From Laetmonice hystrix (taxonomy: Eukaryota), in NCBI GenBank assembly GCA_965235115.1, contig OZ249448.1:3410001-3474000 (forward strand): a DNA stretch of 64,000 bases, written 5' to 3'. The notes under the pieces were generated by a model that worked only from the letters and a program-made list of their open reading frames with translations, was not told where the DNA came from and searched no databases. This document shows, in pieces, positions 26,863 through 64,000 of the stretch. A program made the translations under genes and the position numbers. Positions within the stretch are counted from its first letter, which is position 1. Every line of letters starts with the position of its first letter.

Positions 26863-29367
26863 ATGTCAGCAGGGCTGATTCTTCGTCGAGTGGCAAGCAT
26901 GCTGATGCTAAGCGGGGTTTTCATCAAGAACAAGGACCGATCGAGATGGAAGGACGTTCTTTTGGCAATCTACTGCATCATGATCCTTTCCGGCTATCTT
27001 TTTACTGCTGGAAGATTTGTTTATTATGTTGCAATCTCTGGTCACGGATTCAGTGGATACAAGTTATCGTTATTGCATTCGGTCATCGGTCAGATAACCA
27101 TGGTCTTGATTTTTCTGGTTATATTAAGGACTGGGGGTTGTCTCCAGACCTTTGTGGAATCTTTTGACAAGGAAATGAACAAAGCAGAATTAATGCCTAA
27201 TAGCGTAGGCCTAATTCTCAAGAATGTGGAAAGGGCATCTCTGGTGTGTTTAGTGGTCATTGTCGTCTTGTCTATTGTAAATATATTCGGTCGGTCACTG
27301 GCTTACTTTGGATTCTCCAGAGAGATAACTATGGATCCCTTGTTCCCAATACCTCCAGTGTTTGATACACCTTGGATGATCGGCCTTCAGGCAGTTCACA
27401 TAATCATTGAACAATCACAGCTCGTCCTCTACTTTGCACTGCTTGCAACAGTCATATTCACGTGTATCCTCCTTTTGAAGGCGTTTCAAAGATTCGCACA
27501 GACGATCGCTTCAACGGGAATGGACTGGAATTCAGACTTGGAGATTGAAAACATGCGCTTGCATTACGAGGAGCTCATTCACCTTACTAACGTGGCCGAT
27601 TCAATGTTGAGAGATAGTATCGCAGTGTTGTTTCTGGCAGTGATGATACAAATGTGTTTCGCTATCTTTGGCCTTGTTCGCACTGGCAACTATGGACTCC
27701 ATCTTATATCTACATTTAATGCGGTTTCCGTGATTATCTCTATATTCCTTATTTGGGGTTCCTGCGTTAAGGTGCACCAGAATGTAAGTTGAATGATCAA
27801 AAACCTTTTCACTTAATGAGACCCAGCAAGATTATCTGCCAACACTGATAGGCGGCCTTTCCCTGAACTGTGCCTAGGCATGCATGTGTTTGGTCTGGCA
27901 ATTGCCGTAAATCTGAGAAGAGAGTAGGGGCCCTATGTACATTAAAGAATGTAGGCCCTGTTGGGGCTACTATATGAACATGTTTATTTCCATGTCAACG
28001 TATGCATTAATCACAGATCACAGGAGCAACTCTTGACCTCGAATGGACGAGGCTCCTCTCCTAAGATCGAACTGTTAGTTTTAAATATTTTTGTTATAGT
28101 GGTGTAAAAAAACTTAAAGGGAACCAATTGCATCTTATCTCATTAACATTCCAGAACATATCTTGCAGACCTTAATTCAGTTTATTTTTCCGTTTATTTT
28201 TATAGACATAATTCTTGTTTTATAGAAGAAGACAATGTTGCTTTTGACACAATTAGGTTATTTCACTCATAGGCTTTTGATAAACAGACTTTTATTAAAT
28301 TCTATTTTACTTTTACGTTTATCTTTTGATAAACAGACTTTTATTAAATTTTATTTTACATCCACCTTCTGTGCCAATTGATGTCTGTAGTCGGTATAGG
28401 CCTGCGTGTATAGATCCACCCTGTATATTTAGTAATTACAGGTACTTGGCCTAAATCTGATATCTTTCCATTACCAGGCCTCCCTTCCTCTTGATGAGCT
28501 CTACAGACGCAACCTCTGCACAATCCCAGAGAACTGTGTTCCTAAGGTACCGTACTGGTTTTACTGGGAAAGTTAAATTCAGCAATGGCATCCTGTAGCA
28601 ATACCCATTGCCTAGGTCAAGGTCCATGCTCTAGTTTCACCCAGTCGCCAACGGCGAGTGGCGTTTGTGGGCACCAAGGGAGTCGGAATAAAATTTAAAG
28701 CTTCAAAAAATAGAAAACATTTCCACCCCCTTCCAAAATTCCTTGACTCGCCACTGGAACGATATGAACAATATCAATACTCATGATGAATCTTTATACG
28801 ATTATGGTCATTAAAAATAATGCACTGTAGGGCTACTGTCAGGTTATTATTCAGGAATCCATGTCCTTTCAGATTCAGGTGTTTATCAGTCGCCTTCAGG
28901 GCTCTCGTGTAGGCATCACTGCTGCGGGATTCTTTCTCATTAACAAACAGATGCTTGTTTCCGTATGTAGGCCTTTGTTATTCTATGTCTGAAGAGATTC
29001 CTTCCAGTGGCAGGGTTCCTTCTCATGGTATTTTCACCTAGAATTAAACAAAATCTTAAAGCGCTATTTTGTTATTTTATATGGTTAAACTACAGCCAAG
29101 AGAAGGTAAAACCCTCACTACACTCACTCAGTGAGGGCTTATTGATTCCTGACCTCCTGACATCTGTAAGCATGTATTAAATCATCGTTATCTGGTGACA
29201 AAGAAAAGTTTATTTTTCAGATTGTGGGGACAATCCTGGCCTACACCATTGTGGTTTTGCAGTTCGATCTGGAAACAGCCCTTGGGTGTGATCCTGACCC
29301 GGCACCAGTCCACAATGTCACCGACTCAACATTTTCCGACCTCGGCCCCACTACCTTTCCCTACTAG
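26863..29367 (+). CDS. gustatory receptor-like (GRL/7TM ion channel) gene 1, 408 aa, the most divergent copy
   Basis: Exons 26863-27783, 28478-28546, 28873-28962, 29221-29367; three phase-0 GT-AG introns. Multiple hydrophobic helices; C-terminal GITAAGFFLINKQMLVS-IVGTILAYTIVVLQF matches the GR-superfamily TM7 (T/A)Y-hhhhh-QF motif. Confidence 0.9.
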
Positions 29368-29649
29368 TATTAGGGAAGCACCTTATTATTTAAGGAGACC
29401 GAGTATTTTTTAAAAGTTGTGCATTTACAAGATTACCGTATATCTGGAGTTTCTAAATTGCAAAACAGTGACCCTTTATTGGCCCTTGTAGGAGCCTATC
29501 CTGTAATTTGGTTCCGTGTTATACAGTGTTCCATCTTTTGTAGTTATAGTTTCAATACAGTGTATTCTTTCTATACTGTTTGATTCCGTTGCATAAAAAC
29601 GGCCATGAATTTGGACAGTGTCGCCGCCCTCGCTGTATTTGATGGTCAT

Positions 29650-30610
29650 GGACATGGTTAGGCATACAGTCTAGAAGAGAGCATGTTATTGCATCCCACA
29701 AGGGATAGACTTTCAGGATATTTTTGATACGCTGGATGAAGTGCCATTTAGTGCTGCTCTTTAGGGGGAGCAGGACGATGTTTACAAGCAGGCTCTCAGA
29801 AAGTGAATGGAATGTATACCCCCTATGATAAAGTGTTGGGTCGACATGTGCAAGGTGAACACAGCAGTTGTTTGAGAGAGGCATCTGATGCCAATGGCTG
29901 AAGAGGTGATCCAAAGGATGAACGGAAGCACTGTGTTCAGTAAAATCGACCTTCAAAGTGGATTGCATCAAATTAAATTTGATGAGGAATCCAACAGCAT
30001 AACCAAGTTTACGTGTCATCTAAGGCTTTCCAGATATACAAAAGACTAATGTTTGAGGTCTGCCCTGCTCTGGAACCTTTGCGCAAAATTGTGCTGGCCG
30101 GGTGTAAATGCATAGAGAACATTTCTGACGATTTTATCATACATGGAGAAGGATGAACGCTTATGTGTTTCATCCGTATGCCAGAGCTAGAGTAATGTAG
30201 GCTAGGTCACAACCTGAGTAAAATGGTATTGCACTGGCAAGTGACAGAGTCAAAGCTCTCTCAGAAGCTAGGAAACCAGAGTCGACAACAGGGCGGTTAG
30301 AATTTTACTTGGACTGGTGAACTTTATAGTGCAAGGTTCATACCTATATAACCATATACATGAGGTGATCCATTTAATTGGGGATGTGAACAGGACATTG
30401 CTTTCCAGAAGTTGAAAGATGAACTGAGTAATGCAGACAAGCATAATTTGACAAGGACGAAACAACAGAAATATGGTCTGCCATGTGAGCTGAAGTCTAA
30501 CTCAAGTCGAAGGACACTATTCACAAACTGAGAAGGGGCCCTTGGTATCGTTTGTCGTAAAACCACCATTACTCACTCACCTTAACAGCAGACACGTACG
30601 GAGACTTGAA
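29650..30610 (+). mobile_element. decayed Ty3/Gypsy LTR retrotransposon pol (RT-RNaseH) fragment
   Basis: With stops and frameshifts: VDMCKVNTAVV*ERHLMPMAEEVIQRMNGSTVFSKIDLQSGLHQI, KRLMFEV, ENISDDFIIHG, DRVKALSEARKPES, LGLVNF, AFQKLKDELSNA. Boundaries are approximate. Confidence 0.8.
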
Positions 30611-62650: not shown

Positions 62651-63368
62651 TTAGAGTAACCATTTACATATACATTGTTCAAATAAAATATATTACTGTT
62701 ATAACAGTATAGTAGATGATGACCGCATCCTTTCCTTAGCTTTCTTCCCATGGCACACCAACACGCCGGCCATCTTAAACATTCCATAGAAACCAATATA
62801 ATTTTCCAACCTATCAAAGGCCGAGGGAAACCAAGCGATTCCTTGAGATGCAACGCCATCATAGCTACCTTTCTGTAAAACATGTTCACAACAGATTTAT
62901 TTCCCAATAGGCCAAGGTTGCATCGATCTAAATTAGTAATGACAAATAAATGTCTTGAATATAGAGTTTGGCCAATCAAATTTTAGAATGTTAGCGACTG
63001 CAAAAAATATTCTATGTGCATCAGTAGACCGTCACCTATTCTGGTTGTAAATATTTATGCAAACCATCAGTCAACCAAATACACGGCTGGCCGAAGTGGA
63101 TAATGTTTAGATATTCTCTTGTTGCTATGGTTTCAATGGGCAAAGTGAACTTTGTGGCAGACTGGGCCTGCCTTGCCCATTAGTGACGGCGAATACATTC
63201 ATGCTTAAGCAAAGAACCTTCTATTCACAAACATAACCAGAATGTGTTGTTTCACAAACATGTCCGACCGTTTGCACAGATCATTTCAGCGATTATAATC
63301 TTGTTACGTTCTGCTTTATATAGAGTCAAGGTCTGTTTATACTCAGAGTCGTCGGAACGAGTTCCAGA

Positions 63369-64000
63369 ATGTCAGCGGGGCTGATTCTTCGTCGAGTGGC
63401 AAGCATGCTGATGCTAAGTGGGGTTTTCATCAAGAGCAAGGACCGATCGAGATGGAAGGACGTTCTTTTGGCAATCTACTGCATCATGATCCTTTTCGGC
63501 TATCTCCTTACTGCGGGAAGATTAGTTTTTTATCTTGCAATCTCCACTGAGGCATTCAGTGGGGTCAAGTTATATTTAGTGCATTATACCATCGGAGTTT
63601 TCACCATGTTCTTGATCTATCTGGCTATACAAATGGCGGGGACTTGCCTTCAGACTTTTTTGGAATCTTTTGACAAGGAAATGAACAGAGAAGAAATAAT
63701 GCCCAATGGCGAAGGTCTCGATCTCAGGAATGTGGAAAGGGCATCTCTGGTGTTTTTAGTAGTCAATGTCGTCTCCTCAATTCTAGTCGTAGTCAGTCAG
63801 TCACTGGCTTACTTTGGATTCCGCAGAGCGACACCTCTGGATCCCTTGTTCTCAATACGGCCAGGGTTTGATACACCTTGGATGATCGGCCTTCAGGCAG
63901 TTGACATAATCATCTCACAGTTACGAATCGTTCTCTACTTCGCGGTGCTTGCAATGGTCATATTCACATGTATTCTCCTACTGAAGGCCTTTGAAAGATT
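63369..64000 (+). CDS. GRL gene 9 (5' part of exon 1; truncated by the window end)
   Basis: ATG at 63369; MSAGLILRRVASMLMLSGVFIKSKDRSRWKDVLL...FRRATPLDPLFSIRPGFDTPW...LKAFER, open to the window edge. Confidence 0.88.
   Translation, partial: MSAGLILRRVASMLMLSGVFIKSKDRSRWKDVLLAIYCIMILFGYLLTAGRLVFYLAISTEAFSGVKLYLVHYTIGVFTMFLIYLAIQMAGTCLQTFLESFDKEMNREEIMPNGEGLDLRNVERASLVFLVVNVVSSILVVVSQSLAYFGFRRATPLDPLFSIRPGFDTPWMIGLQAVDIIISQLRIVLYFAVLAMVIFTCILLLKAFER

What the first reader, a model, noticed from the sequence alone, without database searches (positions are those of the whole stretch)
26863..64000. Recently expanded tandem array of at least 9 gustatory-receptor-like ion-channel genes in an apparently non-arthropod animal
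Seen: nine same-strand copies about 4-5 kb apart (6.7 kb between GRL1 and GRL2), each with one large exon and three short 3' exons separated by phase-0 introns. TM7 reads GITAAGFF...IVGTILAYTIVV(F/L)QF. The ORF track truncates them at 309-311 aa and misses the pore-forming exons. Established: the TY-hhhhh-QF motif and three 3' phase-0 introns mark the insect GR/OR and GRL (7TMIC) superfamily; non-arthropod GRLs are mostly few in number and poorly characterised. Inference: an ongoing birth-and-death chemoreceptor expansion, a candidate undescribed chemosensory repertoire.
Basis: partly seen in the sequence, partly recalled or inferred. Interest (0 to 1): 0.72.

Follow-up and report, generated by a model that had tools for sequence, protein, structure and literature searches.

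The report
Tandem array of gustatory-receptor-like channel genes
This stretch holds nine neighbouring copies (seven intact and complete in the window) of a gene for an insect-taste-receptor-type ion channel in what is probably a marine worm; it is a young, still-changing receptor family of a known kind, but so divergent that standard family searches miss it.

Summary
Nine same-strand copies lie at 26863-64000. Eight are complete four-exon genes; the ninth is cut by the window end. Each has a long first exon (918-927 nt), then exons of 69, 90 and 147 nt, with phase-0 GT..AG introns. This is the exon plan published as ancestral for GR/GRL genes.

Family membership rests on four results:
- Profile-profile match to this genome's own Pfam-7tm_7-positive GRLs: probability 97.8%, E 7e-13.
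- An AlphaFold model of exon 1 (pLDDT 81) whose top 20 PDB matches are all insect OR/GR/Orco channels, with no GPCR.
- The 69/90-nt exons sit at the same positions as in a canonical GRL of this genome.
- The pore-helix motif is present, but as AYhhhhhQF, not TYhhhhhQF.

Pfam itself does not recognise the exon-1 proteins. An exhaustive search of 1.84 billion proteins gave one weak hit.

The array continues beyond the window to 11 copies. A collinear sister array of 9 copies sits on another chromosome. Exon-1 dN/dS is 0.50: 0.27 in the cytoplasmic half and 0.80 in the outer half. GRL4 has lost its first splice donor through a 47-bp deletion.

Not tested: expression, ligand, channel activity and read-depth copy number. 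This is a new member of a known kind, of moderate interest.

The parts
26863..29367 (+). GRL1, most divergent copy in the window (408 aa). Exons 26863-27783, 28478-28546, 28873-28962, 29221-29367.
   Evidence: intact frame, phase-0 GT..AG introns. Exon 1 is about 84% identical in nucleotides to the other copies, while the introns are only about 55% identical. Motif AYTIVVLQF.
33530..35931 (+). GRL2 (408 aa). Exons 33530-34450, 34880-34948, 35232-35321, 35785-35931.
   Evidence: In the tree it groups with GRL4/7 and GRL5/C7a.
37519..39977 (+). GRL3 (408 aa). Exons 37519-38439, 38946-39014, 39304-39393, 39831-39977.
   Evidence: Young duplicate of GRL6: dS 0.035, dN/dS 0.45.
41745..44110 (+). 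GRL4, probable recent pseudogene. Exon 1 is 41745-42662 and has no splice donor. Exons 2-4 are intact at 43054-43122, 43411-43500 and 43964-44110.
   Evidence: A 47-bp deletion relative to GRL7, at about 42654/42655, removes the last exon-1 codons and the GT donor. The frame then reads into a stop. The only nearby GT would give a phase-2 junction. dS to GRL7 is 0.015.
45689..48196 (+). GRL5 (410 aa). Exons 45689-46615, 47169-47237, 47526-47615, 48050-48196.
   Evidence: Sister to copy C7a on the other chromosome, support 98/95.
49782..52240 (+). GRL6 (408 aa). Exons 49782-50702, 51209-51277, 51567-51656, 52094-52240.
   Evidence: Duplicate of GRL3.
54007..56420 (+). GRL7, the reference copy (410 aa). 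Exons 54007-54933, 55363-55431, 55721-55810, 56274-56420.
   Evidence: Exon 1 was modelled with pLDDT 81.1 and pTM 0.80. The model matches the OR/GR/Orco fold.
58010..60761 (+). GRL8 (409 aa). Exons 58010-58933, 59755-59823, 60084-60173, 60615-60761.
   Evidence: It groups with six copies (C7b-g) of the other array. dS to C7d is 0.02.
63369..64000 (+). GRL9: the first 632 nt of exon 1, cut by the window end.
   Evidence: The full exon 1 and exons 2-4 lie just beyond the window (L016).
34485..42658 (+). First copy of an 8.2-kb multi-gene block, running from GRL2 intron 1 to the end of GRL4 exon 1. It is duplicated at 46775-54920.
   Evidence: Self-megablast gives 97.56% identity over 8184 nt at an offset of 12.29 kb. 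The block edge coincides with the GRL4 deletion.
46775..54920 (+). Second copy of the 8.2-kb block, running from GRL5 intron 1 to the end of GRL7 exon 1.

Best explanation
What it is. The region is a real, young tandem array of gustatory-receptor-like (GRL) genes, members of the seven-transmembrane ion-channel (7TMIC) superfamily that holds insect GRs, ORs and Orco.

The protein. Each gene encodes a protein of about 409 aa.
- Exon 1 gives an N-terminal re-entrant helix plus helices S1-S6. In insect GRs and ORs this part forms the ligand pocket in its outer half and the cytoplasmic anchor in its inner half.
- The three short 3' exons give the S6-S7 loop, S7a and the pore helix S7b, which carries the motif AYhhhhhQF.

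How it probably works (inferred by analogy with BmGr9, Gr43a and MhOr5). Four subunits would form a ligand-gated cation channel. The motif's Gln and Phe would form the outer gate and its Tyr would contact pore lipids.

How the family grew. It grew by unequal crossing-over, including a three-gene block duplication, and by a multi-gene segmental duplication to another chromosome. The copies are diverging mainly in the outer, pocket-forming half, while the cytoplasmic half and the pore helix are held constant. This is the pattern expected of a diversifying chemoreceptor repertoire.

Shown here: gene structure, family and fold, copy relationships, selection pattern.
Inferred: tetramer, channel activity, chemosensory role.
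For: Gene models:
- Eight complete four-exon models with phase-0 introns; every intron has GT..AG ends except GRL4 intron 1, which lacks its donor.
- Exon sizes (long / 69 / 90 / short) equal the shared GR/GRL structure described in PMC13388675 and the three 3' phase-0 introns of PMC9998090.
- The 7tm_7-positive GRL loci L043 and L046 of the same genome each have a 69-nt and a 90-nt exon. In L043 the last exon also starts 6 residues before the motif, as here.

Homology:
- The window-family profile against this genome's 7tm_7-positive exon 1s gives hhalign probability 97.8%, E 7.1e-13, over 269 collinear columns.
- Those paralogues pass Pfam 7tm_7 and Trehalose_recp cut-offs.
- The only hit in 1.84e9 proteins, P0001 (E 5e-5), itself scores 24 bits on 7tm_7, under the 26.6-bit cut-off.
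- The language-model search puts 7tm_7 clusters first, at 0.95.

Fold:
- AF2 model with pLDDT 81.1 and pTM 0.80.
- The first 20 Foldseek PDB hits are all OR, GR or Orco (TM by query 0.50-0.71, probability 1.00); the next hits have TM about 0.2.
- AFDB cluster hits are almost all named GR or OR, or unnamed.

Topology:
- The N-terminus has 5 K+R against 1 D+E.
- The acidic C-terminal tail carries a conserved N-x-T sequon.

Selection:
- Exon 1 overall: omega 0.50, p 3e-16 against neutrality.
- Cytoplasmic half: omega 0.27. Outer half: omega 0.80.
- Amino-acid entropy is 0.69 in the outer half against 0.32 in the inner half, p 4e-10.
- Exons 2-3 are 98.5% identical among GRL2-8, against 92-94% for the introns.

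Growth of the family.

Motif roles: PMC11100771.
Against: - Pfam gives no significant hit to any exon-1 protein of this subfamily. The best is 7tm_6 at E 0.018, below the cut-off.
- The exon 3 and exon 4 peptides give no 7tm_7 hit.
- A profile search of PDB sequences finds no OR or GR.
- The first motif residue is Ala, so the Thr ring described for BmGr9 is missing.
- The confident model needed canonical GRLs in its alignment. With the nine window copies alone, pLDDT was 45.
- The model lacks S7, because a spliced protein could not be submitted.
- No RNA run exists for this organism in the tools, so splicing and expression are unproven.
- The outer/inner split of residues is my approximation from helix boundaries.
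- Non-insect GRLs are known with non-chemosensory roles (PMC7746228).
Confidence: 0.85

Rival explanations
1. The genes are real GRL/7TMIC genes, but they are not external chemoreceptors. They would serve in development, light or temperature sensing, or internal signalling, as reported for some non-insect GRLs and for Gr28b/LITE-1.
For: PMC7746228 summarises non-chemosensory roles:
- LITE-1 and GUR-3 in light detection;
- a C. elegans homologue in egg-laying motoneurons;
- early developmental expression of GRLs in Nematostella and sea urchin.

No expression data exist here.
Against: A family of 20 or more young paralogues is typical of environmental chemoreceptors. Here variation is concentrated in the pocket-forming outer half (omega 0.80 against 0.27), and gene birth and death are ongoing. 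Developmental or light-sensing GRLs are usually single or few.
Confidence: 0.25
2. Part of the copy number is an assembly artefact. Divergent haplotypes would have been laid in tandem (the 97.6% block) or on the wrong scaffold (the C7 array).
For: - The youngest pairs differ by only 1-4%, which is within the heterozygosity reported for many marine invertebrates (my own knowledge).
- The C7 copies pair collinearly with GRL5, 8, 9 and 10 at dS 0.02-0.07.
- The available runs are short contigs from what seems to be the assembly's own sample, so depth could not be used.
Against: - There is no gap anywhere in the array; the window's only N run is at 445-588.
- Units differ in intron lengths (391-821 nt for intron 1) and in mosaic pattern.
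- C7 lacks counterparts of GRL1-4, 6 and 7, and has six GRL8-like copies. It is not a one-to-one haplotype image.
- The M4 peptidase gene next to GRL1 has no copy at the C7 locus.
- Even if the youngest block were removed, at least 6 distinct genes would remain in the window.
Confidence: 0.1
3. The array is a decaying set of pseudogenes or an untranscribed relic.
For: GRL4 has lost its donor. The eleventh copy, beyond the window, carries a stop or frameshift. No RNA evidence exists.
Against: - Seven complete copies in the window keep open frames, and all their splice sites are intact.
- Omega is 0.50 overall and 0.27 in the cytoplasmic half, both far from neutral.
- Exons 2-3 are more conserved than the introns.
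Confidence: 0.05

Closest known systems
Animal gustatory-receptor-like (GRL) genes outside arthropods (Robertson 2015 and Saina et al. 2015, as cited in PMC7746228; annelid GRLs in PMC6223215 and PMC11730519)
   Same: - Seven-helix, N-in topology.
- TM7 motif ending in QF.
- Long first exon followed by 69-nt, 90-nt and short terminal exons separated by phase-0 introns.
- Profile-level homology to this genome's canonical GRLs.
   Different: - This subfamily is not recognised by Pfam 7tm_7.
- It has Ala at the first motif position.
- It has no detectable relative in 1.84e9 protein clusters apart from one weak hit.
- It is much more numerous (at least 20 near-paralogues in two arrays, plus 4 older paralogues) than the 0-12 GRLs reported for annelid genomes in the papers read.
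Insect gustatory receptors with solved structures: BmGr9, Drosophila Gr43a and Gr64a (8vc1/8vc2, 8jm9, 8jme, 8ze0)
   Same: - Fold match of S0-S6, with TM by query 0.55-0.70.
- Y, Q and F of the pore-helix motif are kept.
- Same exon plan.
   Different: - Only 10-15% sequence identity.
- The T of the TY pair is replaced by A.
- A roughly 34-residue acidic, glycosylation-site-bearing tail follows the motif.
- Ligands are unknown, and neither tetramer nor channel activity has been shown.
Insect odorant receptors and Orco (6c70, 7lic, 8v00, 8z9a)
   Same: - Best Foldseek E-values (AaegOR10 at 9.5e-5; ApisOR5 chain at TM 0.71).
- N-terminal re-entrant helix as in Orco.
- Weak Pfam 7tm_6 hit (E 0.018).
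   Different: ORs are an insect-specific offshoot of GRs. Here the exon structure and the QF-ending motif are GR-type, so the OR matches reflect the shared fold, not membership.
Tandem chemoreceptor arrays evolving by birth-and-death (insect GR/OR clusters)
   Same: - Head-to-tail arrays.
- Young duplicates and pseudogenes.
- Relaxed constraint on pocket regions and strong constraint on the pore and anchor.
   Different: Each unit has its own 3' exons. There is no shared-3'-exon alternative splicing of the kind I recall for Drosophila Gr28b and Gr39a (my own knowledge). A whole multi-gene segment has been copied to another chromosome.

Membership tests
GR/GRL family (7TMIC superfamily) | [quoted passage not shown] | tested here: met
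   - Exons are 918-927 / 69 / 90 / 147 nt and all junctions are phase 0 in GRL1-8.
- The same plan holds in paralogues down to 30% identity.
- The 69-nt and 90-nt exons are also present in the 7tm_7-positive loci L043 and L046, and in L043 the last exon starts 6 residues before the motif, as here.
GR/GRL family (7TMIC superfamily) | TM7 signature motif TYhhhhhQF. | tested here: inconclusive
   All copies read AYTIVV(F/L)QF. Y, Q and F are kept and T is replaced by A. Variant motifs are accepted in bona fide GRs (PMC9998090). A canonical GRL of this genome has TYFVVLLQF.
GR/GRL family (7TMIC superfamily) | Significant match to Pfam 7tm_7 (PF08395) or Trehalose_recp (PF06151). | tested here: not met
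   - Exon-1 proteins of six subfamily members give no 7tm_7 hit. The best hit is 7tm_6 at E 0.018 and 14.6 bits, below the 25.8-bit cut-off.
- The exon 3 and exon 4 peptides alone give none.
- The spliced full-length protein could not be submitted, because it has no reference.
GR/GRL family (7TMIC superfamily) | Demonstrable homology to accepted members. | tested here: met
   - hhalign of A2 against A3 (exon 1s that pass the 7tm_7 cut-off): probability 97.8%, E 7.1e-13, 269 collinear columns.
- HMM hits to L035 and L037: E 1.6e-4 and 6.5e-3.
GR/GRL family (7TMIC superfamily) | 7TMIC fold: re-entrant S0, long S4-S6 helices reaching into a cytoplasmic anchor, no GPCR-like packing. | tested here: met
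   - AF2 model with pLDDT 81 and helices at 3-16, 28-58, 65-105, 120-150, 172-219, 227-275 and 279-308.
- The top 20 PDB hits are all OR, GR or Orco, with no GPCR.
- AFDB hits are GR/OR clusters.
- S7 itself was not modelled.
GR/GRL family (7TMIC superfamily) | Inverted topology: N-terminus inside, C-terminus outside. | tested here: inconclusive
   The charge bias (N-terminus 5 K+R against 1 D+E; C-tail 1 against 5) and a conserved NVT sequon in the C-tail fit N-in/C-out. No dedicated topology predictor or experiment was used.
GR/GRL family (7TMIC superfamily) | Homo- or hetero-tetrameric ligand-gated cation channel. | not testable with these tools
   A tetramer of exon 1 alone exceeds the size limit and lacks S7, which forms the pore and the main contacts. 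No job was sent.
Insect odorant receptors (7tm_6) | Pfam 7tm_6 above the cut-off, and membership of the insect-specific OR clade. | tested here: not met
   7tm_6 scores 14.6 bits, below the 25.8-bit cut-off. The exon plan and motif are GR-type.
G-protein-coupled receptors | GPCR fold and N-out topology. | tested here: not met
   There is no GPCR among the 50 listed PDB matches. Charge and glycosylation point to N-in/C-out.

The most novel reading that the evidence does not exclude
This is a lineage-restricted, fast-evolving clade of 7TM ion-channel chemoreceptors in an annelid: at least 20 young genes in two arrays, with an AY variant of the pore motif. It is invisible to Pfam and has no detectable relatives in public protein sets. 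It would be a major, so far overlooked, part of this worm's chemosensory repertoire, suggesting that GRLs rather than only IRs and GPCRs can dominate chemoreception in some spiralians.
Probability: 0.4. Interest if true: 0.55.

Novelty: new member of a known kind. Interest (0 to 1): 0.42.

Why it matters
Outside arthropods, GRL proteins have almost no expression or functional data (PMC7746228). The annelid genomes covered in the papers I read have 0-12 of them (PMC6223215, PMC11730519).

Here a single genome carries at least 24 members of one divergent subfamily plus at least 9 canonical GRLs. Selection on the subfamily looks like that on insect chemoreceptors. This gives a concrete gene set for asking whether marine worms use 7TM ion channels for chemoreception.

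It also shows that Pfam-based surveys can undercount GRLs badly: none of these genes passes 7tm_7. The biology is what one would expect for the family, so the finding is useful rather than surprising.

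Tried and rejected
- Word-indexed protein search with exon 1 of GRL7 and with a canonical GRL of this genome: no hits. These are blanks, not evidence of absence.
- Exhaustive HMMER search with the nine-copy profile: one hit, P0001, at E 5e-5. It lies on a metagenome contig of an unnamed animal, next to wnt genes.
- PDB sequence search with the family profile: only chance hits to USP36.
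- First AF2 run with the nine near-identical copies: pLDDT 45, unusable.
- Sequencing runs: only three runs of one sample, kept as short contigs, with no RNA.
- Laying those runs on 41700-47699 gave fragmentary 100-300 nt contigs. Depth cannot be read as copy number. One 'goes back 3991' joint is explained by cross-matching between units. No insertion was flagged at the GRL4 deletion site, which is weak, non-independent support for the deletion.
Whether C7 is a true second locus therefore rests on copy content and on the absence of the neighbouring M4 gene there.
- A near relative's contig carrying an 82%-identical M4 peptidase could not be read as DNA. Its gene list shows no 300-aa ORF where GRL1 would lie, but its orthology to this locus is uncertain.
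- The annelid marker Eryth_link_C and the arthropod cuticle domain Chitin_bind_4 both gave no match in the genome. The tool warns that such blanks do not show absence, so the phylum was not settled by me.
- The spliced full-length proteins exist only in my scratch files and have no reference. I therefore did not submit them to Pfam, structure prediction or complex prediction.
- ORFs in the long spacers (29552-30019, 31524-32012, 61944-62479) have no Pfam family.

Full report
**1. What is in the sequence**

ORF listing shows eight same-strand ORFs of 306-311 aa between 26863 and 58942. BLAST of the four exons of a reference copy finds nine exon-1 copies and eight copies each of exons 2, 3 and 4. 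The ninth exon 1, at 63369, is cut by the window end.

I read the reference unit base by base and then built all eight models.
- Exon 1 is 918-927 nt, exon 2 is 69 nt, exon 3 is 90 nt and exon 4 is 147 nt including the stop.
- Every junction is phase 0 and every acceptor is AG. Every donor is GT except in GRL4 intron 1, where the donor is deleted.
- The products are 407-410 aa.
- The window has no gap in the array; its only N run is at 445-588.

- GRL4 has a 47-bp deletion, flanked by a short TTAA(G/A)GG repeat, that removes the last exon-1 codons and the intron-1 donor. The frame then runs into a stop, and the only nearby GT would give a phase-2 junction. GRL4 is therefore most likely a very recent pseudogene; its dS to GRL7 is 0.015.
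- The motif is A-Y-h5-Q-F in all copies, not T-Y-h5-Q-F.
- The family is larger than nine (section 3).

**2. What the genes are**

*Sequence searches are almost blind to this subfamily.*
- Pfam gives only a sub-threshold 7tm_6 hit on exon 1 (E 0.018) and nothing for four older paralogues.
- The word-indexed search is blank.
- An exhaustive profile search of 1.84 billion representative proteins gives one hit, at E 5e-5. That protein scores 24 bits on 7tm_7, under the 26.6-bit cut-off.
- A profile search of PDB sequences finds no OR or GR.

*The link to the GR family comes from four other lines.*

(a) Gene structure. [quoted passage not shown] PMC9998090 gives the three 3' phase-0 introns and the TYhhhhhQF motif as family hallmarks. 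The window genes match this plan exactly.
- Paralogues elsewhere in the genome with only 30-50% identity in exon 1 keep the same exons.
- Two canonical GRLs of this genome (L043, L046) each have a 69-nt exon and a 90-nt exon.
- Their 90-nt exon aligns to the window's exon 3 without gaps (shared MF, RL, G, G, TA, F).
- In L043 the terminal exon starts six residues before TYFVVLLQF, at the same position as here.

(b) Homology. A search of the window's own genome with Pfam 7tm_7 finds nine first exons, eight above the curated cut-off, on contigs C5, C11, C13 and C21. A profile of the window subfamily (A2) against a profile of eight of those nine exon-1s (A3) gives hhalign probability 97.8% and E 7.1e-13, over 269 collinear columns from end to end. 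The subfamily HMM also hits two of them directly, at E 1.6e-4 and 6.5e-3.

(c) Fold.
- With only the nine window copies, AlphaFold failed (pLDDT 45).
- With 26 sequences (subfamily, older paralogues, canonical GRLs) it gave pLDDT 81.1 and pTM 0.80 for exon 1. The model has a short N-terminal helix and six long helices.
- The first twenty Foldseek PDB hits are all insect ORs, GRs or Orco: AaegOR10, MhOR5, ApisOR5-Orco, Gr64a, AgamOR28, Orco, Gr43a and BmGr9. TM by query is 0.50-0.71 and probability is 1.00.
- The next hits drop to TM about 0.2, and no GPCR appears.
- AlphaFold DB clusters give mostly GR or OR entries.
- The language-model search also ranks 7tm_7 clusters first.

(d) Topology. 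The N-terminus is basic (5 K+R against 1 D+E). The tail after the motif is acidic and carries a conserved N-V-T sequon. Both fit the N-in/C-out orientation of 7TMICs. The N-terminal helix corresponds to the re-entrant segment described for Orco (PMC7746228).

I therefore file the genes as GRL members of the 7TMIC superfamily. I note that the Pfam criterion is not met and that the motif is a variant.

**3. Size and history of the family**

*Copy content.*
- The array continues beyond the window to 11 copies on contig C18. The last one is broken by a stop or frameshift.
- A second array of nine copies lies on C7 on the opposite strand.
- Older single paralogues lie on C11, C29 (two) and C8.

*Relationships between the two arrays.* A maximum-likelihood tree of exon 1 gives four well-supported C18-C7 pairings, in the same order along both arrays: GRL5/C7a, GRL8/C7b-g, GRL9/C7h and GRL10/C7i. 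So a multi-gene segment was copied between chromosomes, and each array then amplified different members: GRL3/6 and GRL4/7 on C18, and six GRL8-like genes on C7.

*Structure within the window.*
- An 8.2-kb block (34485-42658) recurs at 46775-54920 with 97.56% identity.
- Different segments of the unit have different nearest neighbours. For example, the upstream 500 nt is 99% identical between GRL2 and GRL3, whose exon 1s are only 92% identical. Intron 3 groups GRL2, 4, 7 and 8. This is the mark of repeated unequal crossing-over or gene conversion.
- The block edge coincides with the GRL4 deletion.

*Age.* Synonymous divergence ranges from 0.015 to about 0.5 across the two arrays, and is about 1.2-1.4 to the older paralogues.

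**4. Selection**

- Pairwise exon-1 dN/dS is 0.3-0.6.
- Pooled over seven pairs it is 0.50, p 3e-16 against neutrality.
- I split residues by the model's helices into an outer half (outer parts of S1-S6 and the outer loops) and a cytoplasmic half. This gives 0.80 (p 0.055) against 0.27 (p 2e-24).
- Amino-acid entropy is twice as high in the outer half, p 4e-10.
- Exons 2 and 3 are 98.5% identical among GRL2-8, while the introns are 92-94% identical.

The genes are thus maintained by selection. Change is concentrated where insect GRs and ORs bind ligands. The outer/inner assignment is my approximation.

**5. How it most likely works**

This part is by analogy with BmGr9 (PMC11100771). Four subunits would form a cation channel whose pore is lined by S7b. 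The motif's Phe would make the outer hydrophobic plug, the Gln would swing in on activation, and the Tyr would contact pore-penetrating lipid. The window proteins keep Y, Q and F. They have Ser at the position seven residues before the motif start, which is a polar ring in BmGr9, but Ala where BmGr9 has the Thr ring.

Ligand binding in the outer half of S2-S6 is inferred from the variability pattern. None of this was tested.

**6. Organism**

I could not name it.
- The genome is 627 Mb in 35 contigs.
- No R&R cuticle domain was found, which fits a non-arthropod, but the tool warns that the blank does not show absence.
- Several earlier agents of this scan call it an annelid. I did not verify that.
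- Papers report 12 GRLs in the first annelid genomes (PMC6223215), and two or none in spionids and siboglinids (PMC11730519). If the annelid call is right, the count here is unusually high.

**7. What could not be done**

- No RNA run is available.
- The DNA runs are short contigs of one sample, so neither depth nor long-range structure could be checked.
- The flanks of the C7 array could not be fetched.

**8. Verdict**

This is a new, divergent and actively expanding subfamily of a known receptor family. It is valuable as a candidate chemoreceptor set and as a warning about Pfam-based counts, but it is not a new kind of system.

Noticed in passing
window 22020-23726 (-): An uninterrupted 568-aa ORF for a vibriolysin-type M4 metallopeptidase lies 3.1 kb from GRL1, in a 2-kb stretch with GC 0.54 against about 0.41 around it.
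- Pfam domains found: FTP, PepSY, Peptidase_M4 and Peptidase_M4_C. The HExxH site is present.
- The best relatives (46-82% identity) are unnamed proteins on long ENA contigs. Named hits at 40-43% are Shewanella and Vibrio enzymes.
- The genome has four more copies: one at C18:13.9 Mb and three on C6.
It looks like an old bacterial acquisition that has since expanded in animals.
   Followed up: partly
G000 C7:32471466-32505255 (-); loci L005, L008, L010-L015, L019: A second array of nine GRL genes sits on another chromosome-scale contig. It is collinear with GRL5, 8, 9 and 10 of this array (dS 0.02-0.07) and includes six GRL8-like copies. Its flanks could not be fetched.
   Followed up: partly
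G000 C5:6.85 Mb (two genes), C5:5.24 and 15.63 Mb, C11:6.99 Mb (two genes), C13:1.91 Mb, C21:10.44 Mb (two genes); loci L039-L047: Nine canonical GRL first exons are recognised by Pfam 7tm_7, eight of them above the cut-off, and several lie in pairs. They carry N-terminal extensions of about 60-125 residues that the window subfamily lacks.
   Followed up: partly
window 14000-18000: A block with GC 0.52 and a strong GC skew (+0.42 to +0.44) stands out from its surroundings.
   Followed up: no
window 61400-62600 (the longer spacer between GRL8 and GRL9) and 29368-33529 (the 4.2-kb spacer after GRL1): Both spacers hold extra sequence that the other spacers lack, with overlapping ORFs on both strands that have no Pfam family. 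These are probably degraded repeat insertions. They account for the longer spacing of these two units.
   Followed up: partly
L038 (ENA metagenome contig, 40 kb): The only outside hit, P0001, is a GRL-like ORF fragment on an animal contig that also carries wnt gene pieces. The organism is unknown.
   Followed up: no
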